The translations under genes and the position numbers were made by a program. A stretch of 64,000 nt of DNA from Lytechinus pictus (lineage: Eukaryota). Numbering within the stretch: position 1 is the stretch's first letter; the number at the start of each line of letters is the position of its first letter. The notes under the pieces are model-generated. The model searched no databases, had not been told where the DNA came from, and saw only the letters and a program-made list of their open reading frames with translations. The stretch covers positions 7,874,001-7,938,000 of the forward strand of contig NC_087249.1 in NCBI RefSeq assembly GCF_037042905.1. Direction: 5' to 3'. Positions 11,794 through 51,594 of the stretch are shown here, piece after piece.

Positions 11794-12019
11794 CACTGTT
11801 AAAAATAATTTAAACAACGCTGTTTACTATGTGAATCGAACAGAAGTTGTTTAAACATGTTAAACAAATGTTTAAAATATTAAACAACAAAGTTTGAATG
11901 CAAATATTTAATTATCAATAATTTAAGCACGGCTTTGAAAGACTTTAAACACTTGTTTAAACTGTTTAAACAACTACTTCACATAGTAAACTGCGTTGTT
12001 TAAATTATTTTTAACAGTG
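11794..12019. mobile_element. CACTA/EnSpm-like MITE inserted in a (TAG)n microsatellite
   Basis: TIR CACTGTTAAAAATAATTTAAACAACGC at both ends, with TA flanks. Confidence 0.75.
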
Positions 12020-12024
12020 TAGTA

Positions 12025-12190
12025 NNNNNNNNNNNNNNNNNNNNNNNNNNNNNNNNNNNNNNNNNNNNNNNNNNNNNNNNNNNNNNNNNNNNNNNNNNNN
12101 NNNNNNNNNNNNNNNNNNNNNNNNNNNNNNNNNNNNNNNNNNNNNNNNNNNNNNNNNNNNNNNNNNNNNNNNNNNNNNNNNNNNNNNNNN
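12025..12190. other. Assembly gap
   Basis: Run of N. Confidence 1.
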
Positions 12191-18454: not shown

Positions 18455-19209
18455 ACAATTTAAAAGAGTATTGAAACAACACTTAAAAAATGTCCCCACT
18501 CTGTAATGTTAAATATTCTTTCTAATTTCATGTTTATCGTGTAGTCTTATATATAACTATTTAGTTATGATTTATTTAATAAACTTGTTTTACATTGTTT
18601 CATCATATTTTGTTGTTTGCGTGAAAGTTTGATGTCAAACTTATTGTACTTTTTCATATCTTAGGTTTTAAGATTCATGAATCTTGTATTAGTTACGATG
18701 CATTTAGCGCTACTTAAAAACTGATTATTAGTGTAATTCTCATATGTAACTTAGAAGTAATGATCGTTTACTCAACCTGTTTTACAATTATTTTAATCAT
18801 ATTTTGTGGACTGCGTAAGTGTTTGTCATGGCAAACTTATTTGTTTTTGTCATTTTATATATTAAGTTTTACAATTCATCGTGTAAATTTAATTGTCTAG
18901 ACTTAATTGATGTAGTTTGTAGATTTCTATAGGTGTTTTTTCATAGATGTACATTGTCTTCAATTACTGATGTAAGGACCCCATTGGAAATAAGCCATCT
19001 CGGCTTTCATGGGTAATCCTGTCAAGGTATACACTTCTGTTTATATTTCCTTGTACTTGTTCATAGTTACCTGACAAATAAAATCAATCAATCAATCAAT
19101 CAAGTCTTCTCCCAGTAACTTAGCGCCACTGAGATTTTTCGACCTTACCACATACATACGAACACAAGGGGTAGTGACAAAACCATGAATGGCTAAAGTG
19201 ACATTTTAC

Positions 19210-20337
19210 CTTTTCATGAACTCGCACTGAGAAATAAGACAGAAGTGACACATTCGTGGAACAGGAAAGGATCCAAAAAGACGTCAAACTAATGTAGAAG
19301 CCGCCGTCAGCAAGATAAAAGAGCTGATATAACAAAAAAATTATGAGCGGAATGTTCGTCGAGTAAATAACGCCTATAAGAGGAGAGAATACATCATCAG
19401 CAACCTCGACAGTGTGGCAAATGACAGCGTGTCTTCGCCGAAAACAACTCAGTGTCTTTTTATCAATACGATGGGGAGAGTTGAGAGACTTGTCGAATTC
19501 TTCTGACAAGTTCTCAAATTGCGACGATATGTTGTAACATATTAGCGAGTAAAGAGCGATCGGAAATATATAGGTAGCAATTGCAAAGCCTGCGAATAGC
19601 AAGTTGAAGCCGCAAAAGTATTCCGAAAGCCATGGCCCACAAATGCCACTTGAGCTCAATGGGTTTAGTCCGAAGCCAAATGTTAAGAACCCGAGTGAAA
19701 CAAAGTTGATAAGCGTGACACAAGTACATGTTATCGTTACAAAAATGGCCCATTTGTCGTATCTTTTGGAATTTTTGTGCCGATTCTCATAAATTTCGTT
19801 TTTCGTGTTAGGGGTCGTCTCATCCAGTGAGCAATGTGTTCGTCTTGTGTAGAGGGATGTCACTGAAGAGTTCCAATGATGCCTGAAGTAGGGCATGCAC
19901 TTTTCTTTGGCACACACTGCAAACATGACGGTATTGCAGAGAGAAACGATGTAAAAGAACACTTGCAATGTTATCTGATCTTGCTTGAACATTCCATACC
20001 TGTCATTCAGAACAATAGCATATGTCACCCGGATCGCATTCAGCCACAGGTATATACACACGAAGGCGTGGTATACCCGAGAAAGGCTATTCTGCCAACT
20101 CCTCGACCTCGGTGGCTCAGGATCAGCATCCGGAAACCTCTCTGAACCTTCAGTCTGGTCCTGGGTTTTGAGGGCGCCCTTGAAAGATGTTTCGTGATAG
20201 ACTCCGACGATCTTCAAGGCCAGAAGGAGTGGTTCTAACATCTCATTCCAAAGAAGAATTTCTTTCACATCATTCCTTGGAGGTTGATCTTGTTTGGTTG
20301 CAGATTCCATATTCCCAATAACATCAATACGATTCAT
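19210..20337 (-). CDS. Gustatory receptor-like gene A, exon 1 (376 aa; full model 465 aa: 20337-19210, 13607-13542, 12860-12768, 12606-12496)
   Basis: Long multi-TM ORF with FRRRHAVICHTVEVADDVFSP (Gr-type RxxHxxLxxxVxxxxxxFS). Ends VHEK|gtaaaa, a phase-0 donor at the same position in all three paralogs. Confidence 0.9.
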
Positions 20338-21278: not shown

Positions 21279-24200
21279 ATGTCTACCTGTAATTTTTTTA
21301 GAGAATGCCTAAACAATTGCAACCATGACTTAAACATCTTGCATGAATTTCTGTCGCTTGATAATTTAGAATTTTCTCCTTGTAAGAAATATTTTACACC
21401 TGATGAGTTTAACACATACATTGAGAGTAAAGCAAAATCAGCATATCCATTTTCATGTATCCACTTGAATTCGAGAAGTCTACTCAATAATTTTGATAAT
21501 ATCATTTTATTTTTAAACAGTGTGAAACTTAAACCTACAGTAATTTGTATCACTGAAACTTGGTTCCGGGAGCACACTATACACCCTTTGTGTAATATAG
21601 ATGGATATAGTTTTGAAGGCGTTAGCCGTTTATCAAGAAGAGGGGGAGGAGTTGGAATTTTTGTAAATAATAGTGTGCAATATGTAAGACGCTCCGACTT
21701 AGAACATAATGATAGTTGTATCGAAAGTGTGTTTGTGGAAATCGTCAATGATAATTCTGGCATTATTGTTGGTTCAATCTATAGGCCCCCAGATCAGTCA
21801 ATTGATGATTTTTTTGAGAGATGCTCAAATGTTTTAAGTATTGTAAATAATGAAAATAAAATAGTTTACTTATTAGGTGATTACAATATCAATTTATTAA
21901 ATGTGGGTAAAGTGCAATATGTTGATAATTTCATTAATCTATTGTTATCACATCATATGTATCCATTGATTGACCATCCTACCAGAATCACGGATGAAAC
22001 AATCTCTTTAATTGATAATATAATCACCAATGATATACACGCAGACAAAGTTGAATCGGGAATACTAATAACTGACATCAGTGATCATTTACCTGTATAC
22101 TCTATTAGCTGGAATGATGTTAAATCACAGCAAAATTTAGATAAACCGCTTCGAATAATCAATGACAATAGTATAAAGTGTTTCTTAAGATCCATTCCAA
22201 TGGTCAATTGGTCTTGCCACAATAACAATCCAAATGCAAATTACGTGCAATTTCTAGAGAAGTTTTTAAATGTATATAACTTATGCTTCCCCTTGGAATA
22301 TTTGAAGAAAAAACCTAAAAAGAATAAACCATGGATTAATTTTGATATTCGAAAGTTGTCAAAGAAAAAATGTCGTTTATATCGACTTTATCTGAAAAAT
22401 CCATCACCATATCGTAAAGAAGTGTACAGAAAATGTAGAAATAAAGTCAGTAATATGATTAAACAAGCTAAAAAACATTATTTCTTGGAAAGTTTTGCAA
22501 ATTCCAAAGGAAATATGAAAAAAACTTGGAATACTGTTAATTGTGCAATGGGTCGTGCAAATAAAAAGTGCAATATTGATTTTCTGAAATGTAATAATCA
22601 AGCATTATATGATACCTCTGCTATTTGTAATGTATTCAATGAATATTTTATCAATATTGTAACTGAAATGAATTTTCCTGTTGATCAGGGCAATAATTTA
22701 AATTTGAATTTTTGTAGATATTTGGATAGAAATCCAAGGACTTGTTTTTTCAAACCAATCACTTGTACCGAGATTATTGATATTGTGTCAAACATAAAAA
22801 GTGATTGCAGTCCTGGGTATGATGATATAAGTATCAAGGTTATAAAGAAATCAATACATATTTTATGTCAACCCCTTTGTGCAATATTCAATCAATGTTT
22901 AGATCTCGGTATATTTCCTGATGAATTAAAGATTGCTCGTGTTGTTCCTGTATATAAAAATGGTCCGAGTGAAAATGTTTCAAATTACAGACCCATATCA
23001 GTCTTGCCAATTTTTTCAAAGATTTTAGAAAAGTGTATATATAATAGATTATTTGATTTTATAAACAAGTGCAATATATTATCTCTACATCAATACGGTT
23101 TTCGTGCTGGTCATTCAACTTCTTCGGCTCTTATTGATTTTGTCCATACTGTTACCAACGCTCTTGATGATAAGAAATATTTGATAGCAATGTTTTTAGA
23201 TTTGAAGAAGGCTTTCGATACAGTTGATCACGCTATTTTATTGAACAAACTAGAATTGTATGGCATAAGAGGTAATGTACTTAAATTATTTAAAAGTTAT
23301 TTATCCAACAGAAAACAATATGTTGAAATATCAAAATGCAAATCACAGCTTAAGATTATCTCATGTGGGGTTCCTCAGGGTTCTATTTTAGGACCGCTCT
23401 TGTTTCTCCTCTTTATTAATGATCTTAGTAAAGTATCCAACTTATTACATTGTATTATGTTTGCTGACGACACTAGTCTGTTTTTATCTCATACAAACTA
23501 TCATGTTTTACACAATTTATTCAATTCTGAACTTGAATTAATATCTGAGTGGTTTTATGCAAACAAAATGATAGTTAATCTTGCCAAAACCAATTATATG
23601 ATTTTTAGTAATTTATTTTTACCAGATAGTCTTTCAATTAGAATGTGCAATACAGATATTAAGTGTGTAACGTCAGTAAAATTTTTAGGAGTAACAATAG
23701 ATAATAAGTTTACATGGAAAAATCATATTGATAATCTGTGCAATAAGCTTGCCAAAAATATAGGAATAATGTATAGATTAAGATCATTTCCCAAGGAGAT
23801 TTTAAAACTAATGTATTATGCCATTGTATATCCATACCTCAATTATGGTATTCTAGCCTGGGGAAGTGCAAGTAGCATTCACATTGATAGATTATATATT
23901 TTACAAAAACGTGCAATAAGAATTATGTCTCATGCTCCTTACCTTGCCCATACGAATCCTCTATTTGTTGAATTGAATGTATTAACATTTTATGATATTC
24001 ATGCATTTCAAATTCTTATATTTATGTATTTATGTAACAATAACCTCTTGCCAGATTACATCAAAACATTCTTTAAGTTCAATAGTGATTTCCATGGATA
24101 CAACACAAGAAATGCAAAGGATTTCCATCTACCTAAGCCAAGACTCTCATCTTTTAAAAACTCAATTTTATTTCAAGGACCACAACTCTGGAATTCTATT

Positions 24201-24281
24201 TCTGTAGACATCAAGCAATCAGTTTCATTAAATGTTTTTAAGTCAAAATCAAGGCAATTTATTTTAAATAGTAATTCATAA
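21279..24281 (+). CDS. LINE ORF2: apurinic-like endonuclease plus reverse transcriptase (intact, 1000 aa)
   Basis: EN motifs HLNSRSL, ITETW, GGGV, IYRPP, GDYNIN, IDNI, SDHLP. RT motifs NYRPIS, DLKKAFD, GVPQGSILGP, FADD, FLG. C-terminal HGYNTR. Confidence 0.96.
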   Translation: MSTCNFFRECLNNCNHDLNILHEFLSLDNLEFSPCKKYFTPDEFNTYIESKAKSAYPFSCIHLNSRSLLNNFDNIILFLNSVKLKPTVICITETWFREHTIHPLCNIDGYSFEGVSRLSRRGGGVGIFVNNSVQYVRRSDLEHNDSCIESVFVEIVNDNSGIIVGSIYRPPDQSIDDFFERCSNVLSIVNNENKIVYLLGDYNINLLNVGKVQYVDNFINLLLSHHMYPLIDHPTRITDETISLIDNIITNDIHADKVESGILITDISDHLPVYSISWNDVKSQQNLDKPLRIINDNSIKCFLRSIPMVNWSCHNNNPNANYVQFLEKFLNVYNLCFPLEYLKKKPKKNKPWINFDIRKLSKKKCRLYRLYLKNPSPYRKEVYRKCRNKVSNMIKQAKKHYFLESFANSKGNMKKTWNTVNCAMGRANKKCNIDFLKCNNQALYDTSAICNVFNEYFINIVTEMNFPVDQGNNLNLNFCRYLDRNPRTCFFKPITCTEIIDIVSNIKSDCSPGYDDISIKVIKKSIHILCQPLCAIFNQCLDLGIFPDELKIARVVPVYKNGPSENVSNYRPISVLPIFSKILEKCIYNRLFDFINKCNILSLHQYGFRAGHSTSSALIDFVHTVTNALDDKKYLIAMFLDLKKAFDTVDHAILLNKLELYGIRGNVLKLFKSYLSNRKQYVEISKCKSQLKIISCGVPQGSILGPLLFLLFINDLSKVSNLLHCIMFADDTSLFLSHTNYHVLHNLFNSELELISEWFYANKMIVNLAKTNYMIFSNLFLPDSLSIRMCNTDIKCVTSVKFLGVTIDNKFTWKNHIDNLCNKLAKNIGIMYRLRSFPKEILKLMYYAIVYPYLNYGILAWGSASSIHIDRLYILQKRAIRIMSHAPYLAHTNPLFVELNVLTFYDIHAFQILIFMYLCNNNLLPDYIKTFFKFNSDFHGYNTRNAKDFHLPKPRLSSFKNSILFQGPQLWNSISVDIKQSVSLNVFKSKSRQFILNSNS

Positions 24282-32405: not shown

Positions 32406-32667
32406 CAACTAGTAAGGCTACTGAAAACCCAAAATATTTTAATGAAAGGATGCATAAGTTGTTCTAAAAAACAATTACCTCGTATATATTGAAAATATTA
32501 AAATTCGAAACATTTACAACGTTTAAAAAAATAACTATTAATGACTTGCTTCTATATGATTTACATTCTTTTATGAATGGAAAAAGGGTAGGCCTAATAG
32601 AATCTAAATAATAATAAATTATTGTATAGCTCAAACATAGGAACCGGCTCCAAAGTAATTATATTAC

Positions 32668-33798
32668 CTTTTCATATACTTGCACTGCGAAAAGGGACGG
32701 CAATAACACATTGGTGGAACAGACGAGGAGCCAACAGAGCGTCATACTGATGTACAATAGGTTTCCATTAGCAAGATAAAAGAGCTCATACAACAGAAAG
32801 ATAATGAGTGGAATGTTCGTCAAGTACACGACTCCCACAAAAGGAGAGAATACATCATCAGCAACCTCGACAGTGTGGCAAATAACAGCATGTCTTCGCC
32901 GAAAACAATTCAGTGTCTTTTTATCAATCGGGTGGGAAGAGTTGAGAGCCTGGTCGAATTCCTCTGACAAATTTTCAAATTGCAACGAAATGTTGTGACA
33001 TATGAGCGAGAAAAGAGCACCCGGAAATGCATAAGCAGCATTTGAATAAACTGCGAATATCAAATTAATGCCGCAAAATGGCTCTGAAAGCCACGGTCCA
33101 CAGATGCCCATTGAAGTCAGCGGGTTTAGTCCGAAGCCAAATGTTGAGAATACCATACCGGCAATGTTGATAAGCATGACACAAGTACATGTTACCGTTA
33201 CAAGCATAGCCCATTTGTTGTATCTTACGGGAGTTTTGTGCTGATTCTCATTAATTTCGTCTTTCGTGTTTAGGGTCGTTTTGTCCAATGAGCAATGTGT
33301 TCGTCTTGTTTGAAGGGACGTGACCGAAGAGTTCCAATGACGCCGGAAGTAGGGCATGCATTTGTCCCTGTAACACACTACGAACATGATGGTATTGCAG
33401 ATAGATACGATGTAAAAGTACACTTGCATTGTTATCAGTTCTTGCGAGAATATTCCGTACCTGTCATTCAGAGCAATAGCATATGTCATCCGGATCGTAT
33501 TCAGCCACAGGTATATACACACCAAAGCGTGGTATACTCGAGAAATACCATTCCGCCAACTCTTCGACCTAGGTGGCTCAGGATCAGCATCAGGAAACCA
33601 TCCTGAACCTTCAGCCTGGCCCTGAGTTTTGAGGGCGCCCTCGAAAGCTGTTTCGTGATAGACTCCAACGATCTTCAAAGTCAAAAGAAGGGGTTCTAAC
33701 ATCTCATTCCAAAGAAGATTTACTTTCACATCATTCCTTGGAGGTTGATCTTGTTTTGTTGCAGATTCCATCTTCCCAATAACAGCAATACGATTCAT
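32668..33798 (-). CDS. Gustatory receptor-like gene B, exon 1 (377 aa; full model 475 aa: 33798-32668, 32173-32108, 28554-28462, 27020-26883)
   Basis: Paralog of 19210-20337. Ends VYEK|gtaata (phase 0). Confidence 0.92.
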
Positions 33799-34650: not shown

Positions 34651-37511
34651 CATGGGCGAAATCTCTCCTTAAACATGTTAAAGGTAGGGGGGACACAATT
34701 GACTTTTCCGTTTTTTTCCGTTTTTAAGTNNNNNNNNNNNNNNNNNNNNNNNNNNNNNNNNNNNNNNNNNNNNNNNNNNNNNNNNNNNNNNNNNNNNNNN
34801 NNNNNNNNNNNNNNNNNNNNNNNNNNNNNNNNNNNNNNNNNNNNNNNNNNNNNNNNNNNNNNNNNNNATTTCGAAGAGGGGAGGTATTCCTAACTAAAGA
34901 TGAAAGGCCTCAATAAATAATGCAAGCGCGAAGCGCGAGCCCAAATATGTCGATATTTTATAAATTGTGACCTGGAAATTGAACATTCTGAACGTTTTTT
35001 GTGATCATGAACTAAATTCGAACCTACCTAAACCATTAATGCGAGCACGAAGTGCGAGCTGAAAGTTTTTGATTTTCCAACCTAAAAACTGGGCATTCTT
35101 AACACTTTTTCAAATCATGAACAGGATATGAATTACCTAAAACTGAACATTCGTAACACTTTTTCAAATCATGAACAGAATAGGAATTTAACTAAATCAT
35201 AGATGCGAGCGCGAGCTGAAAGTTTTTGATGATTTTCCCATCTAAAAACTGAACATTCTTAACAGTTTTATAAAAATCATGATCAGGATAGGAATCTAAT
35301 AAAACAATGCTAGCGCGAAGCGCGAGCTGAAAGTTTTTTTTATTTTCCAACCTAAAAACTGGACATTCGTAACACTTTTTTCAAATCATGAACAGGATAG
35401 GAATTTAACTAAATAATAGCTGCAAGCTGAAAATGTTTGATTTTCCTACCTAAATACTGGACATTCATAGCACTTAAAAAATAATATGAACGGAATAAGA
35501 ATCTAAACAATGAATGAAAGCGCGAGCTGAAAAGGTTTTTGATTTTCCAACCTAACAACTGGACATTCTTAGTACTTAAAAAAAATCATGAACAGGAAAG
35601 GAATCTAAACAATTAATGCGAGCGTGAAGCACGAGCTGAAAGATTTTGATTTTCCAACCTAAAAACTGGACATTCTTAGCACTTAATAATGAACGGAATA
35701 AGAATCAAAACAATGAATGCGAGCGCGAAGCGCGAGCTGAAAGGATTTTTGATTTTCCAACCTAAAAACTGGACATTCTTAGTACTTAAAAAAAATTATG
35801 AACAGGAAAGGAATCTAAACAATTAATGCGGGCGTGAAGCACGAGCTGAAAGTTTTTGATTTTCCAACCTAAAAACTGGACATTCTTAGCACTTAATAAT
35901 GAACGGAATAGGAATCTAAACAATGAATGCGAGCGCGAAGCGCGAGCTGAAAGGGTTTTTGATTTTCCAACCTAACAACTGGACATTCTTAGTACTTAAA
36001 AAAAAATTATGAACAGGAAAGGAATCTAAACAATTAATGCGGGCGCGAAGCGCGAGCTGAAAGTTTGTTATTTTCCAACCTAAAAACTGGACAATCGTAA
36101 CACTTTTTCAAATCATAAACAGGATAGGAATCTTACTAAACAATATTAGATTCGAGCGCGAAGTGTGTGCTGAAGATATGTCATTTCCGGCCTACAAAAT
36201 TGGTATTATTAGCATATTTTAAATCAAGGACAGGGTGGCTATCTAACTAAATTTTAATTGATATGAGCGTGAAGCGTATCCTGATTTTTTTCAATTTTCC
36301 GACCAAAAAAGGCATCTTCTTTTCACCTTATAGCAATAAAACAGGATAATATCTGACCCAACCATATTACCGATGCGAGCGCGAAGCGCGAAATGAATTT
36401 TATTTATATTCGGATCTGAAAACTGGATCTTTCAAGCACTTTTGAAATAAAGAACAAGCAGTCTATCTCAATAAACAATGCGAGCGCAAAGCGCGAGCTA
36501 ATTTTTTTTCTTTAAGATTTAAACCTACAAATTATGAAAAAGATGGATATCTTCCTAAATAAATGATTTGATTTTATATATTTCGATCTTAAAAGTGAAA
36601 GAAAAAAATTTAAGCACGTTTTGAAAGAAGAGATGGCTGTGTATTAATGCGAAGCGCGAGCGATTTTTTTATTTTTTTTACACAATGACCTGAAAGTTTT
36701 ATTTTTTCCGATTATTCCCCTCCCCTTCCATCATTTGATTGTCTTCCTCGTCCTATCTTTCTTCTTATTTTTCTCCTCACCTTCCCATTTTGCGCCGCCA
36801 ATAGGAGGCGGGCAGCCGCTTCGTCCCCTTGATCTACCTATAATGACCCCTCCCACGTACGGCAGGAATTTCGTGTAAAAATGGAATATAAAAGTCTCGT
36901 TAATAGAGTATTTAAAAACAAATTTTGGGGGATTAAACAAAGGTATGTTTTTACGGGGTATGGAACATTCTCGTCTACCATCTATACACTAAATTTACTT
37001 ATAAGTATCCAGGGGCGATTTTCTGTTTTCGTCATTTTCATTAGTTATGAAATTGACAATGGGCATCGAAGTCAGCAATGTCATCACTCTTTGGCTGACA
37101 TATAGGGCTAGATGCGAGTTCGGGAATAGTCGGGCCGGTATGCCTTTTCTTTTCCTATCCAACTGAAAGAGGGTCACTTATATTTCACATTTTTATAAAT
37201 ATATCCAATGATTTTTGTGATGTGAGATTTTCATGACGGCATTTTAATATTGTAACTGTTATACCCATACTATTTTCAGGTATCAACATTGATTTTTTTT
37301 TAACAGGGAGCGATGTTATATTTTGCCTTTAACAAAAACTCTTTGTTTATATTTATTTCGAAATTCGAGGATACATGTGTATAATTTCGATTTTGAATTA
37401 TGTATTTTGATCCATAATAAAATACCACAAATAGTGGGGGGACATTTGATATTACGTACCCCCTTTCCAAAATGGTAGGGGGACGCGTCCCCCCTGGGAT
37501 TTCCGCCCATG
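34651..37511. mobile_element. Non-autonomous hAT-like element carrying an internal tandem array of about 115-120 bp units
   Basis: Ends catgggcgaaatc / gatttccgcccatg. Flanks gggtgaca / aggtgacg (degenerate 8-bp TSD). Array units contain gcgagcgcgaagcgcgagctgaaa...ttttccaacctaaaaactggacattc. Confidence 0.6.
34730..34867. other. Assembly gap
   Basis: Run of N. Confidence 1.
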
Positions 37512-40500
37512 AGGTGACGGATGAATGGGCCATTCAACGAGTCGCAGCGGAGTTGAATTGATCATTTATTTCATCTTTCACCGAATGAGTATTCTGTCCA
37601 TTGCACGAATATTTGATTTATATGACACCTAAAAATAGATTCTTGTAATTTACAGATTTGAATGCAAAAGTGCATTTAGTGCGAACGCGTTCTGTTGACT
37701 GTCGCATACATACAACAAAATCGTATGGATAAAAAATTGCACGGATTATGACGTCATTGTAAATTGTGCTGAATGATCGACATCGAACAACCAATCAAAT
37801 GACAAGGAACTATCTAGGTGTCATATAATGACATATAAACACGGAGCTTCAACATGCTCAAGTATCAACACGGCAAACTCTGGATCATGCCGGCATGATC
37901 CAAGGAAGTCCGGGATAATTTTGCTCCGAATTTAGCGTCGAAGAGCGTTGTTCACGCGGTATCAACGCGGCATTAACACGATGTTTACATGTATCTACAG
38001 AGACCATGCCTGCAGAGCACGTCGTCGACACCATGTACACGGACCGTCACACAGTGGGCCAGAATGAGTTGAAAGTGCGCCAAAATTATATTCCGTGTTA
38101 TATGTTTACCTTAACATGTTGGTTATGGGTAATTTTGGGCGTAGAATCGACTGAACATAATTTAAAGCCGATATGACGTCACTTTGATACCAAATTATGA
38201 TTGGCTACTTAAAACCTATCTGTGAAAAGACAAATTGCAGTATATAAACAAAGTGCAGTATATAAACTTTGTGTTATGTGTTACTTTAAGATTGACCAGA
38301 CATGTCAGAGTGAATGTTGGTTCATGCTTCTCACATGCCTAAAAAGTGTGTACGAGATCCTGAAAATAATTTTATGGCATCAAAATGATCATTATATTTT
38401 CAAAATCTGAAAATATTAACCGTGCTTTATCATGTTTATCAAGCGGTGCAGACTTGGGTAAAACGCACCACGAATGGTTTACTATGAGGAGGGTTTTGGG
38501 CTGAAATTATTCTACAAGTAACTTTTATCTATGGAAGAGGGGCGGGTAGCCCTTATATGCGTTACCAACCTTTATTTTGGTTGCATTATGCCCGGAATTC
38601 ATGTCATTTTCATGGAATGAAAGGGGAATCGTCCTCGCCGTGCAAAAATGAACGGCATTGTACACCCACACGGGTTTTCCAACCTAAAAACTGGACATTC
38701 ATAACACTTTTTTCAAATCATGAACAGGATAGGAATTTAACTAAATAATAGCTGCAAGCTGAAAATGTTTGATTTTCCTACCTAAATACTGGACATTCAT
38801 AGCACTTAAAAAATAATATGAACGGAATAAGAATCTAAACAATGAATGAAAGCGCGAGCTGAAAAGGTTTTTGATTTTCCAACCTAACAACTGGACATTC
38901 TTAGTACTTAAAAAAAATCATGAACAGGAAAGGAATCTAAACAATTAATGCGAGCGTGAAGCACGAGCTGAAAGATTTTGATTTTCCAACCTAAAAACTG
39001 GACATTCTTAGCACTTAATAATGAACGGAATAAGAATCAAAACAATGAATGCGAGCGCGAAGCGCGAGCTGAAAGGATTTTTGATTTTCCAACCTAAAAA
39101 CTGGACATTCTTAGTACTTAAAAAAAATTATGAACAGGAAAGGAATCTAAACAATTAATGCGGGCGTGAAGCACGAGCTGAAAGTTTTTGATTTTCCAAC
39201 CTAAAAACTGGACATTCTTAGCACTTAATAATGAACGGAATAGGAATCTAAACAATGAATGCGAGCGCGAAGCGCGAGCTGAAAGGGTTTTTGATTTTCC
39301 AACCTAACAACTGGACATTCTTAGTACTTAAAAAAAAATTATGAACAGGAAAGGAATCTAAACAATTAATGCGGGCGCGAAGCGCGAGCTGAAAGTTTGT
39401 TATTTTCCAACCTAAAAACTGGACAATCGTAACACTTTTTCAAATCATAAACAGGATAGGAATCTTACTAAACAATATTAGATTCGAGCGCGAAGTGTGT
39501 GCTGAAGATATGTCATTTCCGGCCTACAAAATTGGTATTATTAGCATATTTTAAATCAAGGACAGGGTGGCTATCTAACTAAATTTTAATTGATATGAGC
39601 GTGAAGCGTATCCTGATTTTTTTCAATTTTCCGACCAAAAAAGGCATCTTCTTTTCACCTTATAGCAATAAAACAGGATAATATCTGACCCAACCATATT
39701 ACCGATGCGAGCGCGAAGCGCGAAATGAATTTTATTTATATTCGGATCTGAAAACTGGATCTTTCAAGCACTTTTGAAATAAAGAACAAGCAGTCTATCT
39801 CAATAAACAATGCGAGCGCAAAGCGCGAGCTAATTTTTTTTCTTTAAGATTTAAACCTACAAATTATGAAAAAGATGGATATCTTCCTAAATAAATGATT
39901 TGATTTTATATATTTCGATCTTAAAAGTGAAAGAAAAAAATTTAAGCACGTTTTGAAAGAAGAGATGGCTGTGTATTAATGCGAAGCGCGAGCGATTTTT
40001 TTATTTTTTTTACACAATGACCTGAAAGTTTTATTTTTTCCGATTATTCCCCTCCCCTTCCATCATTTGATTTTCTTCCTCGTCCTATCTTTCTTCTTAT
40101 TTTTCTCCTCACCTTCCCATTTTGCGCCGCCAATAGGAGGCGGGCAGCCGCTTCGTCCCCTTGATCTACCTATAATGACCCCTCCCACGTACGGCAGGAA
40201 TTTCGTGTAAAAATGGAATATAAAAGTCTCGTTAATAGAGTATTTAAAAACAAATTTTGGGGGATTAAACAAAGGTATGTTTTTACGGGGTATGGAACAT
40301 TCTCGTCTACCATCTATACACTAAATTTACTTATAAGTATCCAGGGGCGATTTTCTGTTTTCGTCATTTTCATTAGTTATGAAATTGACAATGGGCATCG
40401 AAGTCAGCAATGTCATCACTCTTTGGCTGACATATAGGGCTAGATGCGAGTTCGGGAATAGTCGGGCCGGTATGCCTTTTCTTTTCCTATCCAACTGAAA

Positions 40501-42005
40501 GAGGGTCACTTATATTTCACATTTTTATAAATATATCCAATGATTTTTGTGATGTGAGATTTTCATGACGGCATTTTAATATTGTAACTGTTATACCCAT
40601 ACTATTTTCAGGTATCAACATTGATTTTTTTTTAACAGGGAGCGATGTTATATTTTGCCTTTAACAAAAACTCTTTGTTTATATTTATTTCGAAATTCGA
40701 GGATGCATGTGTATAATTTCGATTTTGAATTATGTATTTTGATCCATAATAAAATACCACAAATAGTGGGGGGACATTTGATATTACGTACCCCCTTTCC
40801 AAAATGGTAGGGGGACGCGTCCCCCCTGGGATTTCCGCCCATGAGGTGACGGATGAATGGGCCATTCAACGAGTCGCAGCGGAGTTGAATTGATCATTTA
40901 TTTCATCTTTCACCGAATGAGTATTCTGTCCATTGCACGAATATTTGATTTATATGACACCTAAAAATAGATTCTTGTAATTTACAGATTTGAATGCAAA
41001 AGTGCATTTAGTGCGAACGCGTTCTGTTGACTGTCGCATACATACAACAAAATCGTATGGATAAAAAATTGCACGGATTATGACGTCATTGTAAATTGTG
41101 CTGAATGATCGACATCGAACAACCAATCAAATGACAAGGAACTATCTAGGTGTCATATAATGACATATAAACACGGAGCTTCAACATGCTCAAGTATCAA
41201 CACGGCAAACTCTGGATCATGCCGGCATGATCCAAGGAAGTCCGGGATAATTTTGCTCCGAATTTAGCGTCGAAGAGCGTTGTTCACGCGGTATCAACGC
41301 GGCATTAACACGATGTTTACATGTATCTACAGAGACCATGCCTGCAGAGCACGTCGTCGACACCATGTACACGGACCGTCACACAGTGGGCCAGAATGAG
41401 TTGAAAGTGCGCCAAAATTATATTCCGTGTTATATGTTTACCTTAACATGTTGGTTATGGGTAATTTTGGGCGTAGAATCGACTGAACATAATTTAAAGC
41501 CGATATGACGTCACTTTGATACCAAATTATGATTGGCTACTTAAAACCTATCTGTGAAAAGACAAATTGCAGTATATAAACAAAGTGCAGTATATAAACT
41601 TTGTGTTATGTGTTACTTTAAGATTGACCAGACATGTCAGAGTGAATGTTGGTTCATGCTTCTCACATGCCTAAAAAGTGTGTACGAGATCCTGAAAATA
41701 ATTTTATGGCATCAAAATGATCATTATATTTTCAAAATCTGAAAATATTAACCGTGCTTTATCATGTTTATCAAGCGGTGCAGACTTGGGTAAAACGCAC
41801 CACGAATGGTTTACTATGAGGAGGGTTTTGGGCTGAAATTATTCTACAAGTAACTTTTATCTATGGAAGAGGGGCGGGTAGCCCTTATATGCGTTACCAA
41901 CCTTTATTTTGGTTGCATTATGCCCGGAATTCATGTCATTTTCATGGAATGAAAGGGGAATCGTCCTCGCCGTGCAAAAATGAACGGCATTGTACACCCA
42001 CACGG
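35343..42005. repeat. Near-identical tandem duplication, period 3332 bp (35343-38673 and 38675-42005)
   Basis: Identical ORF-track hits offset by 3332 (e.g. 36881/40213, 38222/41554). Only a few substitutions seen. Confidence 0.95.
38050..38673. mobile_element. Truncated left half of the Transib-like element (product of the tandem duplication)
   Basis: cgtca|CACAGTGGGCCAGAATGAG..., matching 41382-42005 and cut at the duplication junction. Confidence 0.8.
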
Positions 42006-42588
42006 TGCGCTGCGATGACTGCGCGGTATAAAATTGACCGTTTTGAACCGGTTTTGGGGGTGTTAATGTCAAGTAAAATCGGCTCTAACATAAAAACGGG
42101 CAGCTAAATTTGGTATCGACTGGTATCGACTTAAAGCTTGGACATCTGGCAAAATGATGATGATAGAATTTAAATGGAAATCCAAACGTTTCTAATGTAA
42201 ATGCAAAAAACATGGATTATCAGCCTATTTCGAGGAATAATTACCCTGTAAACCTCCTGAAATGTGTCTTTTTTCTAACTTGAACCCTTTCACACGAAAA
42301 AAGAATATATCAGGATTATGTGGGTGCCATTTCAGATTCCTACATGAAAAACCTCCTGTGAAATGGCCTGTTTTACAACTAAGTTGTCATATACGCGGCA
42401 TTTCGCAAAATGTCACATTTTACGATTTGAGGTAGGAAATTAACAACCTTTATGCAAAATCCCGAATGAAATATTTTGCTGAAGTATTCTTCAAAGTGTT
42501 GTCTTTCAGCTGGGCATGACAAAAATTAAAAACTGAAATTGCCCAATATGACTTTTGGCGCACTTTTGTTTCGCCCCGGCCCACTGTG
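41382..42588. mobile_element. Non-autonomous Transib-like DNA transposon with RSS-like terminal inverted repeats
   Basis: Both ends begin CACAGTGGGCC and share AAAGTGCGCCAAAA at the same spacing. Perfect 5-bp TSD CGTCA (41377-81, 42589-93). 1207 bp with no transposase ORF. Confidence 0.85.
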
Positions 42589-42973
42589 CGTCAGTGCGTC
42601 CGCACGGACTAATTAACAAAAGAGAGGAAAGGTCCATGCGAGTGTGTTAACTTTTGTCTTAGTCTTAATTGGACTTGATCTGATACTCTGAATGCCATGT
42701 AGTTGAGTTGAACATTACATATAAACCTCTGGGAGACATGTGGATTTAATTTTATGTGAAGGATCTCGCCAAATCATTGAATTTTCACCTTCTCTTGAAT
42801 GAGCAGATTGTCTTTGACCTGTATGTGTGGAAATTGTGGTCCCAAATATAATACTATCTGTGAGTAACATGTGACAAAGTGTACTTTCACTTTCAATTAT
42901 TCCACCTCTTTTTCTTCATCCACGGAGCTTACATTCTTCCCTTCTCTCCTTCACTGCGGTCTTCAGCAACATC

Positions 42974-43717
42974 ATGCCGTCAACACGTCAAGATTCTTCT
43001 GCTGGAAGTAGTCTTGCTCCAGACTTTTCTGATGTCCACGATATCATTAAAAAAATATTTTGTGAAGATGATTTTGTGTCCGCGTTGGAGAGGAGCATTG
43101 AGAAAGTTCTCTCAAAGCGCCAGCGAGAGTTTGAGGAGAGGATAGAGAGGCAGGAAGGTGAAATCCATGATCTACAAGTAGCATTGAATCAAAAGGAGGC
43201 TGAGATCCACTCAATCACCACTTCCATGAAGAAGCTGGAAAGCAGAGTAGAGGCTTACGAGGGTAAGAGCAACGAGCTAGAGCAGTATAGTAGGAGGAAC
43301 TCTGTTCGGGTGTTTGGTGTGCCAGAGTCATCAACAGAGTCTACGGACAACCTGGTGATGAAGGTGGCAACAGATCGCCTTGGCTGCCCGATAAGCAAGG
43401 CTGACATCGAGAGATCACATCGATCGGGAAAGCCCCGCTCTGACAGAAAGCCTCGGCCTATCCTGGTCAAGCTCTGCTCCCATCGAGTGAAGGCTGCACT
43501 GATGAAGGATCGCCGTAAATTGAAGGGGTCAGGTATCTCCATCCAGGAGGACCTAACAAAGTTAAATCATCAAATTCTCATGAAATTGTCCTCCCATCCA
43601 AAAGTCGAAGCGGCTTGGTCAACTGATGGGAGAGTCATGGCTGCCCTCAAGACCAACCAAGAGGGAATCCAAGTTAAGAGGTCCTTCTCATCACTGCAAC
43701 AAGTCTCTTCTTTATAA
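42974..43717 (+). CDS. LINE ORF1 (coiled coil plus L1-ORF1-like RRM/CTD), 247 aa
   Basis: Heptad-rich E/K region, then LEQYSRRNSVRVFGVPE, IERSHR, PRPILVKL, IQEDLT, AWSTDGRV. Confidence 0.9.
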   Translation: MPSTRQDSSAGSSLAPDFSDVHDIIKKIFCEDDFVSALERSIEKVLSKRQREFEERIERQEGEIHDLQVALNQKEAEIHSITTSMKKLESRVEAYEGKSNELEQYSRRNSVRVFGVPESSTESTDNLVMKVATDRLGCPISKADIERSHRSGKPRSDRKPRPILVKLCSHRVKAALMKDRRKLKGSGISIQEDLTKLNHQILMKLSSHPKVEAAWSTDGRVMAALKTNQEGIQVKRSFSSLQQVSSL

Positions 43718-44130
43718 CTTCCAACTTTTGTGTTTAACTTTATTTCCACTGTTACCTCTCTCAGGGGTTTACCTTTTAACTGTAACTTGAACATTACTTC
43801 ACCCTTTTTCTGATTTCCACTTATTTTCTTAGTTTCTTTTATCATTCTTTTCTTCCCGCTTTTTTGTCTAACTTGTGTCTCGTTGTATATTTATAATGTC
43901 ATTTGCTCTTGCATTTGCTTTTCTTCTATATACTATGTACATACCTGTATATATTCATCATATAGTTGTTAATGTGTCTGTGTGTGTGTCTGTGAATATG
44001 TGTAATGGCTGTCCTCAGATTTCCATGTTTCATCCACCCTTGTTGATATTTTATATTTGTTTGGTCTGTGACGGATATGGTTTAATAAATGCTGTATTGG
44101 TTTATTGTTTGCTTGTTGAAATCTCTCCTC

Positions 44131-47080
44131 ATGGATGACGGATTTAATATTCCAGAACCGGTTATTAATGAGTGTAAATACATAAACTGTGAAGATTTCC
44201 AATGTAATGGTGAAAACTTTTCCGTTATGCATATTAATTCGAGAAGTCTCTTTAAAAATTTTGAAGATTTGGCGGTCTTGTTATCATGTATAAATCATAA
44301 TTTTTCTGTGATTGGTGTTTCAGAAACCTGGTTTACTCCATCCACAGAAGTAGCTATGTTTGATATTCCTGGATATTCACTTGTTCAAGTATGTCGATCA
44401 AATAAAAAAAGGTGGTGGTGTAGCATGTTATGTCAGAGAGGGGCTTGATTACAAATTACGCAATGATTTATCAACGGCAAATACTTATTATGAGTCTGTA
44501 TTTATTGAATTGAATAATGCAAACAAAAAGTCAATTGTTGGTTGTGTGTATAGAGCCCCTGGCAATGATATTCGATCATTTACTGATGACTTTGACCAAG
44601 AAATGCAAATATTGAGTAAAGAAAATAAGGACATTTATATTATGGGTGATTTTAACATTAACTTGTTAAATGCTGATACAGATGAAAAGGTTAGAGATTT
44701 TAATAATTTCATGTGTTCATTTGGCTTGTTTTCCCTAATCACTAAACCTACACGCATAACATCATCTTCAGCAACCTTAATTGATAATATATTTACCAAT
44801 TGTGTTCAATATCAATTCTGCTCTGGAATATTTTGTTCTGATTTTTCTGATCATATGCCGATTTGTAGCATTAACAAAGGCAATGCCATTACTTCTAGTG
44901 AAACAAAAAGAAAAGTGTTCAGACGTCTAATTACTGAAGTAAGAATGAATTACTTTAGACAAGATTTACTTAACACAGATTGGTCTGTTTTATATGATTT
45001 GTTTGACGCTAATGTGTCGTTTAACTATTTTAGTGACATTTTTTCTCAGTTATACAATGAACATTTCCCTTTAATTAAATGCAGTGGTAAGAATAAATGC
45101 AGGAAACCATGGATTACTCCAGTTCTTCTATAATCCATTCATAAAAAGCAGAAGCTTTACTATGCATATATAAAAAATAAAAACGAAATTAATAGGAAAA
45201 AGTATATTGATTACAAAAATACATTGACAAATCTTGTTCGTCAAAGTAAGAAGAATTATTATGATAATGTTTTTCGAACAAATCAAAATGATATGAGGAA
45301 GACTTGGTCCCATATCAATGAATTGCTTGGGAGGGGGAAGAAAACGCCACTCCCAAATGACATGTATCATAACGAATCGTTGTTAAATTCAGATCTACAT
45401 AAAGCTGAGTATTTTAATAAATATTTTATTGATCTACCTTCTAAAATAAGCAAGAAAATTCCTTCTGTCCAATCGTCATACAGAGATTTTATGTCGGTCC
45501 AAAATCACTCCTCATCCTTGTATTTTCGACCAACATCTGTTTGTGAAATTTCTAATTTGGTTTCGACTTTAAAACCATCGAAGGCATGCGGGTCAGATGA
45601 TGTTTCTCCCAAGGTCATAAAAAATTGTATTCAATGCATTGTTGATCCCTTATGCGATATTTTTAATAAGTCCTTGTTTCAGGGTATTGTCCCTGACAAA
45701 CTGAAAATAGCTAGAGTAGTCCCAGTATTTAAAAAGAATGATCGTAAATGCATTGAAAATTACAGACCTATTGCGTTGTTACCCATATTCTCAAAAATTC
45801 TTGAGAAAATAGTGTACAAAAGAATGGATGATTTCCTTCAACTTCATAACATAATGATACCACAACAATTTGGATTTCGAAAGAATTACTCCACAAGTAT
45901 GGGCGTCTTGAATTTAGTAAATACCATTATAAGTGCAATTGATAGTGGAAAATTTTGTATTGGTGTGTTTCTTGATTTATCGAAAGCATTTGATACTATC
46001 GATCATGATATATTATTGTACAAGCTTGAGCATTATGGTGTTCGTGGGGTAGCCTTAAGTTGGTTCAAAAATTACTTAACGAATAGATGTCAGTATGTAA
46101 CGATTAATGGAGTTAAATCACAATCTAAGGAGGTTAAATGTGGTGTACCCCAAGGCTCGGTTCTGGGTCCCTTATTGTTCTTGATTTATGTTAATGACAT
46201 TATAAATTCATCAAAATTGTTTACTTATTCACTATTCGCAGATGACACTTGCTTACTTTCCCATCACAAAGATATGGAAACTCTCATACTCTCAACTAAC
46301 AATGAAATTAAAAATATATTTAAATGGTTTTGCTGTAACAAGCTTTTATTAAATGCTAGTAAAACTCAATATATTGTCTTTAGAACAAGGGGTAAACGAG
46401 TCCCTGAAGATACTAATCCATTATCAATAGGAGGCCATCAGATCAATCGAAGTCAAGATGTAAGGTTTTTGGGAGTTGTAGTTGATGATCACTTATCATG
46501 GAAAAATCACCTCAGTTATGTTTGTACTAAGGTATCAAGGAGCGTTGGTGTCATTTATAAATTACGTTTCTCTCTCCCTCAGCAGACCTTAGTAACTCTT
46601 TACAATGCTATTATTATGCCACACTTAAATTATTGTAATGTTGCATGGGGAAATACATATAGGAACCATTTAAACAAACTGCTAGTTCTTCAGAAGAAAG
46701 TTATGAGGCTCATGACATATTCGAATTACAGATGTCCAAGTATTCCTTTATTTCTGCAATTGAAGATTTTGCCTCTTGATGATTTAGTCTCCCTCAATTG
46801 CTTGATATCTATGTACAAATCACAATCCTCTCAAAACTGTTCATTTTTAAAAGATGCATTTGTTGTTAACTCAAATGTCCATTTGTACAATACACGGCAG
46901 AAAAATCTTATCCACCAGCCACTTGCAAGAACAAATACTGCTTTGAATTCTTTTGTGATAGTTTGTACAAAAGAATGGAATAAGTTACCACAAAACTTTA
47001 GATCCAGTCCAACACTGCCCATATTTAAAATTTCATGTCGAAAATATTTATTTGAAAGATTACAAAATATCTTAAATTGA
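44131..47080 (+). pseudogene. LINE ORF2 (EN plus RT) with one frameshift and one premature stop
   Basis: +1 frameshift in the A-run at about 44404-44410 (CRSNKK/GGGV). In-frame TAA at 45131-45133. Otherwise continuous EN and RT motifs. Confidence 0.92.
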
Positions 47081-49490: not shown

Positions 49491-50478
49491 CTAATTATAT
49501 ATCTATGTTCTTTTATAAGAAGAATGAAGTGACTGTCATATATATGTCTGTATATATATATGTGTGTGGTGAGGGTGTGTGTGGTGCCCTTAGAGGTGTG
49601 TGTGTAATTATGGAAAATTCAATTGTGTCCCCCCCCCCCACCTTCGAGGAGAGATTTCAGCACCCCCACTGAAAAAATCGTTCCCAGGTCCCTGGGTTAC
49701 CGGTAATTTGACGATGCTAATTCATTCCACGCGCATGCGTACTCTTAATCCGAAGACGCAAGTCATGAATATTCATATATTGGTCCAGAACTCGGTGGGA
49801 AAAATAATTTCGCTTCCCGGTCACTCCGGATCTGGTCCGGCGTGTAAATCTGACTGATCTGGATTGATCAGGGGGAGATATCCGGACATAGATTTTGAAC
49901 TAAATGAGTAAAGGTATAAGTTTTATACGTTTCGGTGTATATTTTCAGTGTACAACATGGTACAAAGAGGAGAGTTGTATACTTCTGTGACATCACAGAT
50001 CTTGGTTGCATTGTCGATTGGAGTACCTCTGTAGCATAAGTGATTTCGACATGCCAAATGCTCATAACTTTCTTATTGCTTGTCCAATTGTTCTCAAATG
50101 TCCATTCATTTCATTCTTTAATTTTCCTTTTTCATACGCTCTAACTCCTTTGAAATACTGAGATTTGGAGACAGTGATTAATGTGTGAAAGGAGCCATTT
50201 AGTAATTTTAATAGGCAATGGGTGATTTCAAGTTCAGTGTTGACCTGTTGGTGTTAGGTCAACTTTTCCACGATTATAACACCAAACATAAAATGAAGAT
50301 GGTCCCGAAAAGTCATTCACTAGTAGTTGAGATGTCAATAATGTGATCTGGATCAGTTTTACAAACTCTGAATAAGTTTTGGAGCAAGAGGAAGCGATCC
50401 AAATTTCAACTTCAACACCAAGGCCAACACCGGACTTGAAAACACTCATTGCCCTCGACTCCGATGTATTCGTTTTAC

Positions 50479-51594
50479 CTTGTCATGAACTCGCACTGTG
50501 AAAAAGGACAGCAGTAAGACAGTGGTGGAACAGCTAAACAGCCAGAAAAGCGTCAGACCAGTGAAGATTAAGTCACCGTCAGCAATATAAAAGAGCTGAT
50601 ACAACAGAAAAATGATGAGCGGAATGTTCGTCGAGTAAATAACGCCTATAAGAGGAGAGAATACATCATCAGCAACCTCGACAGTGTGGCAAATAACAGC
50701 GTGTCTTCGCCGAAAACAATTCAGTGTCATTTTATCAATCGGATGGGGAGAGTTGAGAGCCTGGTCGAATTCTTCCGACAGGTTGTTGAATTGCAACGAA
50801 ATGTTATGACATATGAGGGAATAAAGAGCGCCCGGGAATATGTACGCAGTAGTTGCATAAACTGCGAAAATCAAGTTGATGCCGCAAAATAGCTCTGTAA
50901 GCCAAGGTCCGCAGACTCCACTTGAACTCAGCGGGTTTAGTCCTCCGAAGCCAAATGTCAAGAAAATCATAGTAGCAACGTTGAAAAGTGTCATACAAAT
51001 ACAAGTTATCGTTACAAATACAGCCGATTTGGTGTACTGTTTAGGATTCCCATGTAAGTTTTCTGCCTTTGTGTTGAGGGTTCTATCGAATGAGCATTGT
51101 GTTCGTCTTGTGTTAAGGAATGTAACCGAAGAGTTCCAATGACGATGGAACAAGGGCATTCCTTTTTCCCTGTAACACACTGCGAACATGATGGTATTGC
51201 ATATAGAAACGACGTAAAAGTAAACTTGCAATGTTATCTGATCGTACCTGACACTGAGAGAAATAACGTAGGTCATCCGAATCGCATTCAGCCACAGGTA
51301 TATACACACGAAGGCGTGATATACCCGAGAAAGGCCATTCCGCCAGCTCCTCGACCATGTCGACCTCGGTGGCTCAGGATCAGCATCAGGAAACCACCCT
51401 GAACCTTCAGTCTGGTCCTGGGTTCTGAGGGCGCCCTTGAAAGCTGTTTCGTGATAGACTCCGACGATCTTCAAAACCAGAAGGAGGGGTTCCAACATCT
51501 CATTCCAAAGAAGATTTACTTTCACATCATTCCTTGGAGGTTGATCTTGTTTGGTTGCAGAGTCCATCTTCCCAATAACAGAAATGCGATTCAT
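50479..51594 (-). CDS. Gustatory receptor-like exon 1C (372 aa, intact); no dedicated exons 2-4 visible
   Basis: Third paralog of the long first exon. Open frame from ATG to VHDK|gtaaaa (phase-0 donor). Confidence 0.88.

What the first reader, a model, noticed from the sequence alone, without database searches (positions are those of the whole stretch)
41377..42593. Transib-like element whose ends resemble V(D)J recombination signal sequences
Seen: the right end (reverse complement) is CACAGTG + GGCCGGGGCGAA (12 bp) + ACAAAAGTG, a perfect heptamer with a 12-bp spacer and a 6/9 match to the nonamer ACAAAAACC. The left end is CACAGTG + 12 bp + TTGAAAGTG, with CCAAAATTA (5/9) after a 23-bp spacer. 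The TSD is a perfect GC-rich 5-mer, CGTCA. Established: Transib and RAG-like transposons have CAC-initiated RSS-like TIRs and 5-bp TSDs and gave rise to RAG1; sea urchins carry both Transib and RAG1L/RAG2L sequences. Inference: a recently mobilised non-autonomous element, implying a Transib or RAG-like transposase elsewhere in the genome. Its largely symmetric TIRs favour Transib over ProtoRAG.
Basis: partly seen in the sequence, partly recalled or inferred. Interest (0 to 1): 0.7.

Follow-up and report, generated by a model that had tools for sequence, protein, structure and literature searches.

The report
Passenger Transib transposon in sea urchin
This is a real 1.2-kb non-coding copy of a Transib-type cut-and-paste transposon in the painted sea urchin genome. 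An allele without it is still found in sequenced animals, so it arrived fairly recently, but the kind has been known in sea urchins since 2005 and is ordinary.

Summary
Window 41382-42588 is a 1207-bp element starting CACAGTG and ending CACTGTG, flanked by a perfect 5-bp duplication, CGTCA.

Both ends have the same two-block layout. Positions 1-11 and 23-36 are identical at the two ends, and positions 12-22 vary. There is therefore no 12/23 asymmetry. The "12-spacer" and "23-spacer" nonamers are two readings of one conserved block.

Contigs from three independent DNA samples of the same species show:
- a highly repeated family whose similarity stops exactly at the two terminal bases;
- heterogeneous, GC-rich flanks;
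- internally deleted relatives;
- a contig joining 41376 to 42589 with 5 shared letters, which is the exact empty site.

The element has no coding capacity and no Rfam or tRNA match. The genome is Lytechinus pictus (GCA_037042905.1).

The end layout fits the published Transib design. It does not fit RAG-like (RAGL) transposon ends, which have an A-rich stretch at positions 8-10, and in RAGL-A also unequal spacers. The transposase could not be looked for with these tools.

This scan has already reported same-sized Transib mini-elements elsewhere in this genome and reached the same verdict. What is new here is the evidence for insertion polymorphism, and a 3332-bp tandem duplication that copied the left 624 bp of the element. 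I rate this a new member of a known kind, of low interest.

The parts
41377..41381 (.). Left copy of the 5-bp target site duplication, CGTCA
   Evidence: The 5 letters shared across the empty-site joint ('both' = 5).
41382..42588 (+). The element: 1207 bp, 37.9% GC, non-coding, non-autonomous Transib-type transposon
   Evidence: Boundaries from the TIR/TSD and from read-contig loose ends at 41382 and 42590 and the depth drop after 42601. No ORF over 72 aa. No Pfam or PDB match. No Rfam or tRNA match.
41382..41417 (+). Left terminal inverted repeat: heptamer CACAGTG within conserved block 1 (positions 1-11), variable 12-22, conserved block 2 (23-36, AAAGTGCGCCAAAA)
42553..42588 (-). Right terminal inverted repeat, same two-block layout and same spacing as the left one
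42589..42593 (.). Right copy of the 5-bp target site duplication, CGTCA
41562..41599 (+). Internal 18-bp unit repeated 2.1 times (ACAAAGTGCAGTATATAA); no known role
38045..38673 (+). Second copy of the left TSD, left TIR and first 624 bp of the element, 100% identical, cut off at 38673 and joined to a satellite
   Evidence: It is part of the tandem duplication and not a separate insertion.
35343..42005 (.). Tandem duplication, unit 3332 bp (35343-38673 and 38675-42005), 3 mismatches, one extra G at the junction (38674). The distal breakpoint lies inside the element.
   Evidence: Family contigs run straight across 42005 (table 8, record 3: 41907-42053), so the uninterrupted element is the original form.

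Best explanation
Window 41382-42588 is one copy of a multi-copy, non-coding (non-autonomous) DNA transposon of the Transib superfamily in Lytechinus pictus. It carries only the two ends that a transposase needs. Each end has a CACAGTG heptamer at the tip and a second conserved A-rich block about two helical turns further in, with the same spacing at both ends (an 'RSS23/RSS23-like' design, not a 12/23 pair). The inferred mechanism is as follows. A Transib transposase encoded elsewhere binds both ends and nicks next to the CAC. It releases the element by forming hairpins on the flanking DNA. It then inserts the element with a 5-bp stagger into a GC-rich site, which produced the CGTCA duplication. 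The insertion is young enough that the uninserted allele still exists in sequenced animals. After the insertion, a 3332-bp tandem duplication copied the left flank and the first 624 bp of the element. Shown here: the ends, the TSD, the GC-rich target, the lack of coding capacity, the multi-copy family with exact ends, the internal-deletion relatives and the empty site. Inferred: the identity of the enzyme and the cleavage chemistry.
For: TSD and TIR were read directly and are far beyond chance (0.00 expected; 0.03 expected). In one search, summed contig depth is 10^3-10^4 inside the element against about 50-250 in the right flank in three samples, with the drop after 42601. In each run, 19-25 contigs have loose ends exactly at 41382 and 42590 with heterogeneous flanks (agreement 0.40-0.47), and the flank consensus is GC-rich (left flanks end in CGGCG). 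Joints such as 41568->42569 and 42040->42548 indicate internally deleted relatives. The joint 41376->42589 skips 1212 bp with 5 shared letters in X1, X4 and X6 (three samples, three studies). In X4 its depth is 56, against 111 for a neighbouring unique contig. The target 25-mer is 68% GC, in the top 1.3% of the window. There is no coding capacity and no RNA family match. Literature: Transib is the only eukaryotic superfamily with 5-bp TSDs and prefers GC-rich targets. Its 38-bp end is a CAC heptamer, about 22-23 variable bp and an A-rich nonamer, with A at positions 34-35. Most families have RSS23-like ends on both sides. Transib1_SP and TransibN1_SP exist in sea urchin (PMC1131882). Here positions 33-36 are AAAA at both ends. 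Hztransib cleaves by nick-hairpin and always makes 5-bp, GC-enriched TSDs (PMC4840297). Transibs with intact ends occur in many echinoderms, while no mobile RAGL is known there (PMC10629977).
Against: No transposase was seen. The element has no coding remnant, and the genome could not be searched for an autonomous partner with the same ends, so superfamily assignment rests on the ends, the TSD and the target only. The empty-site contig has only 24 letters on its shorter side. That is the length expected for a k=31 graph contig starting at an allelic branch point, but it is below the tool's 31-letter bridging rule, and part of the left flank is itself mildly repeated. Most family contigs are only 90-95% like this copy (table 1), so the family as a whole is not very young. 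Depth from contigs is not a copy number.
Confidence: 0.85

Rival explanations
1. It is a non-autonomous RAG-like (RAGL-A or RAGL-B, 'ProtoRAG-type') element, moved by a RAG1L/RAG2L pair and not by a single Transib transposase.
For: RAGL transposons also have CAC-led heptamer ends, 5-bp TSDs and GC-rich targets, and non-autonomous RAGL elements exist in some deuterostomes (PMC7204232; PMC10629977). Sea urchins carry RAG1L/RAG2L genes.
Against: The RAGL end consensus has a conserved A-rich stretch at positions 8-10 (TR2) and similarity confined to about 15 bp. RAGL-A ends add a 10-bp spacer asymmetry. Here positions 8-10 are GGC, the ends are equal in layout, and a second block at 23-36 is conserved. 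No RAGL element capable of transposition is known in echinoderms, whereas Transibs with intact ends are.
Confidence: 0.07
2. The element is a Transib-type copy, but it is old and fixed. On this reading the 'empty site' contig comes from a paralogous, uninserted duplicate of the flanking region or from a graph artefact, and not from an allele.
For: The shorter side of the joint is only 24 letters, and 'between: not known' is stated. The left flank bins 41270-41343 have about 10 times the depth of the right flank. The region is duplication-prone. Most family contigs are 90-95% like this copy.
Against: The same joint appears in three samples from three studies, with exactly the 5 TSD letters shared. 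Its longer side lies in the right flank, which has unique-level depth. Its depth is about half that of a neighbouring unique contig in X4 (56 against 111), as an allele would be. The TSD is perfect, and both conserved end blocks are identical between the ends.
Confidence: 0.12
3. It is a chance inverted repeat, or an element of another superfamily (hAT, CACTA/Chapaev, PIF and others).
For: None beyond the lack of a transposase.
Against: Chance is excluded and by the multi-copy family with exact ends. Per PMC1131882, 5-bp TSDs distinguish Transib from all other eukaryotic superfamilies, hAT makes 8-bp TSDs, its third terminal base is G not C, and it has no second conserved block. From memory, CACTA and Chapaev make 3-4-bp TSDs.
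Confidence: 0.02

Closest known systems
TransibN1_SP and Transib1_SP of Strongylocentrotus purpuratus (Kapitonov & Jurka 2005, PMC1131882)
   Same: Both are sea urchin hosts. Both have 5-bp GC-rich TSDs (the Transib1_SP copy has CGGCG, and the flank consensus of this family also ends in CGGCG). Both have a CAC heptamer plus a distal A-rich block. TransibN1_SP is non-autonomous as well.
   Different: The species and presumably the family differ. Sequence relatedness to the Repbase entries could not be tested, because no Repbase or Dfam library is available here and the paper's supplement is not held.
Hztransib of Helicoverpa zea (Hencken 2012, cited in PMC4840297)
   Same: It is the biochemical model for the inferred mechanism: nick-hairpin cleavage at a CAC heptamer and invariably 5-bp, GC-enriched TSDs.
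   Different: Hztransib is autonomous and from an insect. Its ends show little nonamer similarity, whereas this element has a clearly conserved distal block.
V(D)J recombination signal sequences (12RSS/23RSS)
   Same: The heptamer is identical to the RSS consensus CACAGTG. An A-run sits at the position of the 23RSS nonamer core (positions 33-36).
   Different: Both ends have the same spacing, so there is no 12/23 pair. Nonamer matches are only 5-6 of 9. The 'spacer' starts with a conserved GGCC.
RAGL-B (ProtoRAG) and RAGL-A transposon ends
   Same: CAC-led heptamer, 5-bp GC-rich TSD.
   Different: There is no A-rich TR2 at positions 8-10 and no 10-bp spacer asymmetry, and a distal block is conserved at both ends.

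Membership tests
Transib superfamily (canonical Transib clade), non-autonomous member | 5-bp target site duplication | tested here: met
   CGTCA on both sides. The empty-site joint shares exactly 5 letters.
Transib superfamily (canonical Transib clade), non-autonomous member | Termini 5'-CAC...GTG-3' with an RSS-like heptamer | tested here: met
   CACAGTG / CACTGTG. Family contigs end exactly at these bases.
Transib superfamily (canonical Transib clade), non-autonomous member | End of about 38 bp = heptamer + about 22-23 less conserved bp + A-rich nonamer, with A at positions 34 and 35 (PMC1131882) | tested here: met
   Positions 33-36 are AAAA at both ends. Block 23-36 is identical at both ends and 12-22 is variable. 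Only the two ends of one copy were compared. Family-wide conservation was seen only indirectly: no majority differences are listed within about 50 bp of either tip.
Transib superfamily (canonical Transib clade), non-autonomous member | Preference for GC-rich targets in an AT-rich genome | tested here: met
   The 25-bp site is 68% GC against 36% for the window, in the top 1.3%. The flank consensus of other copies is GC-rich, while the loose ends of a neighbouring repeat are AT-rich.
Transib superfamily (canonical Transib clade), non-autonomous member | An autonomous partner with the same ends encoding a RAG1-core-like DDE transposase of about 700 aa | not testable with these tools
   The L. pictus assembly cannot be searched here. 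There is no coding remnant in the element. An earlier scan note reports only a dead transposase tail elsewhere in the genome (unchecked).
Non-autonomous (MITE-like) DNA transposon | No transposase gene, many copies with shared ends at different loci, internal-deletion variants | tested here: met
   (no coding capacity). (19-25 distinct flanks per end per run, depth 10^3-10^4 against about 10^2, deletion joints).
RAGL-B (ProtoRAG-type) transposon | Conserved A-rich TR2 at end positions 8-10, similarity confined to about 15 bp (PMC7204232) | tested here: not met
   Positions 8-10 are GGC. A second conserved block lies at 23-36.
RAGL-A transposon | Heptamer - TR2 - spacer with 10-bp length asymmetry - AT-rich nonamer (PMC10629977) | tested here: not met
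   Both ends have identical spacing and there is no A-rich TR2.
12/23 RSS-like asymmetric end pair | One end with a 12-bp and the other with a 23-bp heptamer-nonamer spacing | tested here: not met
   An ungapped alignment of the two ends keeps both conserved blocks in register.

The most novel reading that the evidence does not exclude
The family is being moved today not by a Transib transposase but by one of the sea urchin's own, supposedly domesticated RAG1-like/RAG2-like proteins acting on heptamer-plus-distal-block ends. That would be a living RAG-like enzyme and RSS-like substrate pair in an echinoderm. A milder version is that an intact Transib transposase is currently active in L. pictus, a laboratory model.
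Probability: 0.04. Interest if true: 0.75.

Novelty: new member of a known kind. Interest (0 to 1): 0.25.

Why it matters
Transib ends and transposases are the accepted source of the RAG1 core and the V(D)J signals, so well-bounded copies in a deuterostome are useful comparative material. This copy adds little that is new in kind. Non-autonomous Transibs with RSS23-like ends on both sides have been described in sea urchins since 2005. The modest added value is evidence that the insertion is still polymorphic in L. pictus. This suggests fairly recent Transib activity in a species now used as a genetic model, and it gives a concrete locus for genotyping. It also corrects the recurring over-reading of these ends as a 12/23 pair.

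Tried and rejected
- Coding remnants: ten ORFs of the element against Pfam at E up to 10 gave nothing. The two longest ORFs against PDB sequences gave nothing meaningful.
- RNA genes: Rfam at E up to 1 and ARAGORN over 41000-43000 gave nothing.
- Other genomic copies through exact-protein look-up of the 72-aa and 71-aa ORFs: not on record.
- TransibN1_SP termini from the 2005 paper's supplement: not held.
- Earlier scan notes by sequence: blank.
- The neighbouring + strand ORFs at 42974-47080 were checked as a possible transposase. They are a LINE (coiled-coil ORF1, endonuclease, reverse transcriptase).
- The left end at 38050 was considered as a second insertion, or as the true left end of a 4.5-kb element. 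This was rejected because 2.7 kb of flank is duplicated with it, and family contigs run straight across the 42005 breakpoint.
- The transposase search (tblastn of the assembly) was not possible.

Full report
**1. What is in the sequence**

- CGTCA lies at 41377-41381 and again at 42589-42593.
- Between them is a 1207-bp stretch (41382-42588) that starts CACAGTG and ends CACTGTG.
- The inverted-repeat finder reports 47-nt arms at 41371-41417 and 42553-42599.

An ungapped alignment of the left end with the reverse complement of the right end shows three zones:
- positions 1-11 (CACAGTGGGCC) are identical;
- positions 12-22 are mostly different;
- positions 23-36 (AAAGTGCGCCAAAA) are identical, and similarity then fades.

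The base just outside the heptamer differs between the two ends, so the element starts exactly at CAC.

**2. More than chance**

- The 11-mer with up to 1 mismatch occurs 3 times in the window, against 0.22 expected.
- The two-block 36-bp pattern with up to 3 mismatches occurs 3 times, against 0.00 in 100 shuffles.
- A scan of my own looked for CAC...GTG pairs within 12 kb with at least 11/13 inverted matches and identical 5-mers outside. It found 3 in the window, against 0.03 per mononucleotide shuffle.

**3. The third end at 38050 is a duplication, not a second insertion**

Window 35343-38673 is repeated at 38675-42005 (offset 3332) with only 3 mismatches and a single extra G at the junction. 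The repeated unit contains:
- a satellite with periods of 101 and 210 bp;
- about 2.7 kb of the left flank;
- the left TSD, the left end and the first 624 bp of the element.

At 38673 the first copy of the element is cut off and joined to the satellite. Family contigs from public runs run straight across the matching point, 42005, of the complete copy (table 8, record 3: 41907-42053). The uninterrupted element is therefore the original form, and the duplication came after the insertion. It may also be an assembly artefact. I could not test that.

**4. Evidence from public reads**

I laid the contigs of four runs on 40900-43100 at 88% likeness. X1, X4 and X6 are three samples from three studies of organism A. 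X7 is organism B.

*Repetition.* Summed contig depth is 10^3-10^4 across 41344-42601 and falls to about 50-250 from 42602 on in all three organism-A runs. The tool warns that this is not a copy number, so I take it only as "highly repeated, order 10^2".

*Exact ends.* Loose ends pile up exactly at 41382 (19 and 22 contigs in X1 and X4) and at 42590 (25, 25 and 19 contigs). Agreement is low (0.40-0.47), which means many different flanks. The consensus of those flanks is GC-rich, and the left flanks end in CGGCG. The loose ends of an unrelated repeat ending at 41160/41161 are AT-rich, as expected for this genome.

*Deleted relatives.* Joints such as 41568->42569, 41859->42281, 42040->42548 and 42234->42553 indicate internally deleted relatives.

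*Empty site.* A joint from 41376 to 42589 skips 1212 bp (the element plus one TSD copy) with 5 letters fitting on either side. It is present as one contig in each of X1, X4 and X6, at depths 58, 56 and 73. This is the exact empty site.
- Its shorter side is only 24 letters. That length is roughly what a k=31 graph contig starting at an allelic branch point would have (about 25 flank letters plus the 5 TSD letters make up the k-1 overlap). It is still below the tool's 31-letter bridging rule.
- In X4 a neighbouring unique contig (42662-42799) has depth 111, about twice that of the empty-site contig, as expected for an allele.
- No listed contig of the filled allele bridging into the unique flank was shown, so I do not claim heterozygosity of any one animal.

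*Age of the family.* Most family contigs are 90-95% like this copy (table 1), so the family is not uniformly young.

*Organism B.* X7 has a near-identical right flank (record 32). It also has a contig that matches 41382-41488 and then runs on into other sequence (record 25). This is a copy at another locus ending at the same terminal base.

**5. Content and surroundings**

- The element has no ORF longer than 72 aa.
- Ten ORFs gave no Pfam match even at E up to 10, and the two longest gave no meaningful PDB match.
- There is no Rfam or tRNA match.
- It contains one 18-bp unit repeated 2.1 times.
- It is 37.9% GC, in a window of 36.1% GC.
- The reconstructed 25-bp target is 68% GC, in the top 1.3% of all 25-mers of the window.
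- Downstream, the + strand ORFs at 42974-47080 are a LINE, with a coiled-coil ORF1, an endonuclease and a reverse transcriptase.
- The window also holds single-exon 7tm_7 chemoreceptor-like ORFs at 19120-20337 and 50446-51594.
- The latter ORF is found exactly in NCBI assembly GCA_037042905.1, record CM073230.1. PMC11082199 cites that assembly as Lytechinus pictus.

**6. What it is**

Kapitonov and Jurka 2005 (PMC1131882) state the following about Transib:
- It is the only eukaryotic DNA transposon superfamily with 5-bp TSDs.
- Transib and RAG transposition prefer GC-rich targets even in AT-rich genomes.
- The 38-bp Transib end is a CAC-led heptamer, a variable spacer of about 22-23 bp and an A-rich nonamer, with conserved A at positions 34-35.
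- Most families have RSS23-like ends on both sides.
- S. purpuratus carries Transib1_SP (one copy has TSD CGGCG) and the non-autonomous TransibN1_SP.

This element meets each sequence criterion, and positions 33-36 are AAAA at both ends.

The alternative, RAG-like transposons, fits less well.
- Their ends have a conserved AAA at positions 8-10 (TR2), with similarity confined to about 15 bp (PMC7204232).
- RAGL-A ends add a 10-bp spacer asymmetry (PMC10629977).
- Here positions 8-10 are GGC, the two ends have equal spacing, and a distal block is conserved.
- The same 2023 paper notes that no RAGL element capable of transposition is known in echinoderms, whereas Transibs with intact ends occur in many of them.

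**7. The RSS resemblance**

The heptamer equals the RSS consensus. Both are present at both ends. There is no 12/23 asymmetry in this copy.

**8. Mechanism**

The chemistry is inferred from the family. Hztransib cuts by a nick-hairpin reaction like RAG and makes invariably 5-bp, GC-enriched TSDs (PMC4840297). By analogy, a transposase encoded elsewhere would:
- bind both ends;
- nick beside the CAC;
- leave hairpins on the flanks;
- insert the blunt-ended element with a 5-bp stagger.

An exact empty site with a single CGTCA is what the uninserted allele looks like. An excision site would be expected to carry a footprint (my own knowledge of hairpin-end repair).

**9. Relation to earlier work of this scan**

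Eighteen notes on this genome mention Transib. Two follow-ups on elements of 1232 and 1215 letters (s1-311596, s1-294506) reached the same conclusion: symmetric ends, an ordinary non-autonomous Transib. So the scan has found this kind, and probably this family, before on other DNA. I reached the symmetry reading from my own alignment before seeing those notes. One note reports only a dead transposase tail in this genome (s1-327711). I did not check it.

**10. Verdict**

The feature is real and was correctly interpreted. It is an ordinary member of a known kind. Two things are new for this copy: the evidence for insertion polymorphism, and the partial tandem duplication.

Noticed in passing
window 35343-42005: Near-perfect tandem duplication of a 3332-bp unit (3 mismatches, one extra G at the 38674 junction). 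One breakpoint lies in a 101/210-bp satellite and the other inside the Transib element. It could be a very recent duplication or an assembly artefact.
   Followed up: partly
window 11794-12019: 226-bp MITE-like element with inverted ends of about 40 bp starting CACTGTTAAAAAT. It is flanked by TAGTA on both sides, sits inside an AGT microsatellite and lies directly next to the N run 12025-12190. The apparent 5-bp TSD may simply be microsatellite sequence. A related end with 1 mismatch lies at 28006.
   Followed up: no
window 35208-36105 and 38675-39465: Satellite with units of about 101 and 210 bp (consensus contains TTTTCCAACCTAAAAACTGGACATTC), present in both copies of the duplication.
   Followed up: no
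window 42974-47080 (+), also 21279-24281 (+) and 17110-18438 (+): LINE retrotransposon ORFs (coiled-coil ORF1, endonuclease, reverse transcriptase). The first starts about 380 bp downstream of the Transib element.
   Followed up: partly
window 19120-20337 (-), 50446-51594 (-), possibly 32659-33798 (-): Single-exon ORFs of about 380-405 aa, two with weak 7tm_7 chemosensory-receptor matches just below the Pfam cut-off. This looks like a small cluster of gustatory-receptor-like genes, with the transposon lying between them.
   Followed up: partly
window 40900-41160: A very high-copy repeat (contig depth up to 8x10^4) ends sharply at 41160/41161 with AT-rich heterogeneous flanks in all four runs, including organism B. 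It was not identified.
   Followed up: no
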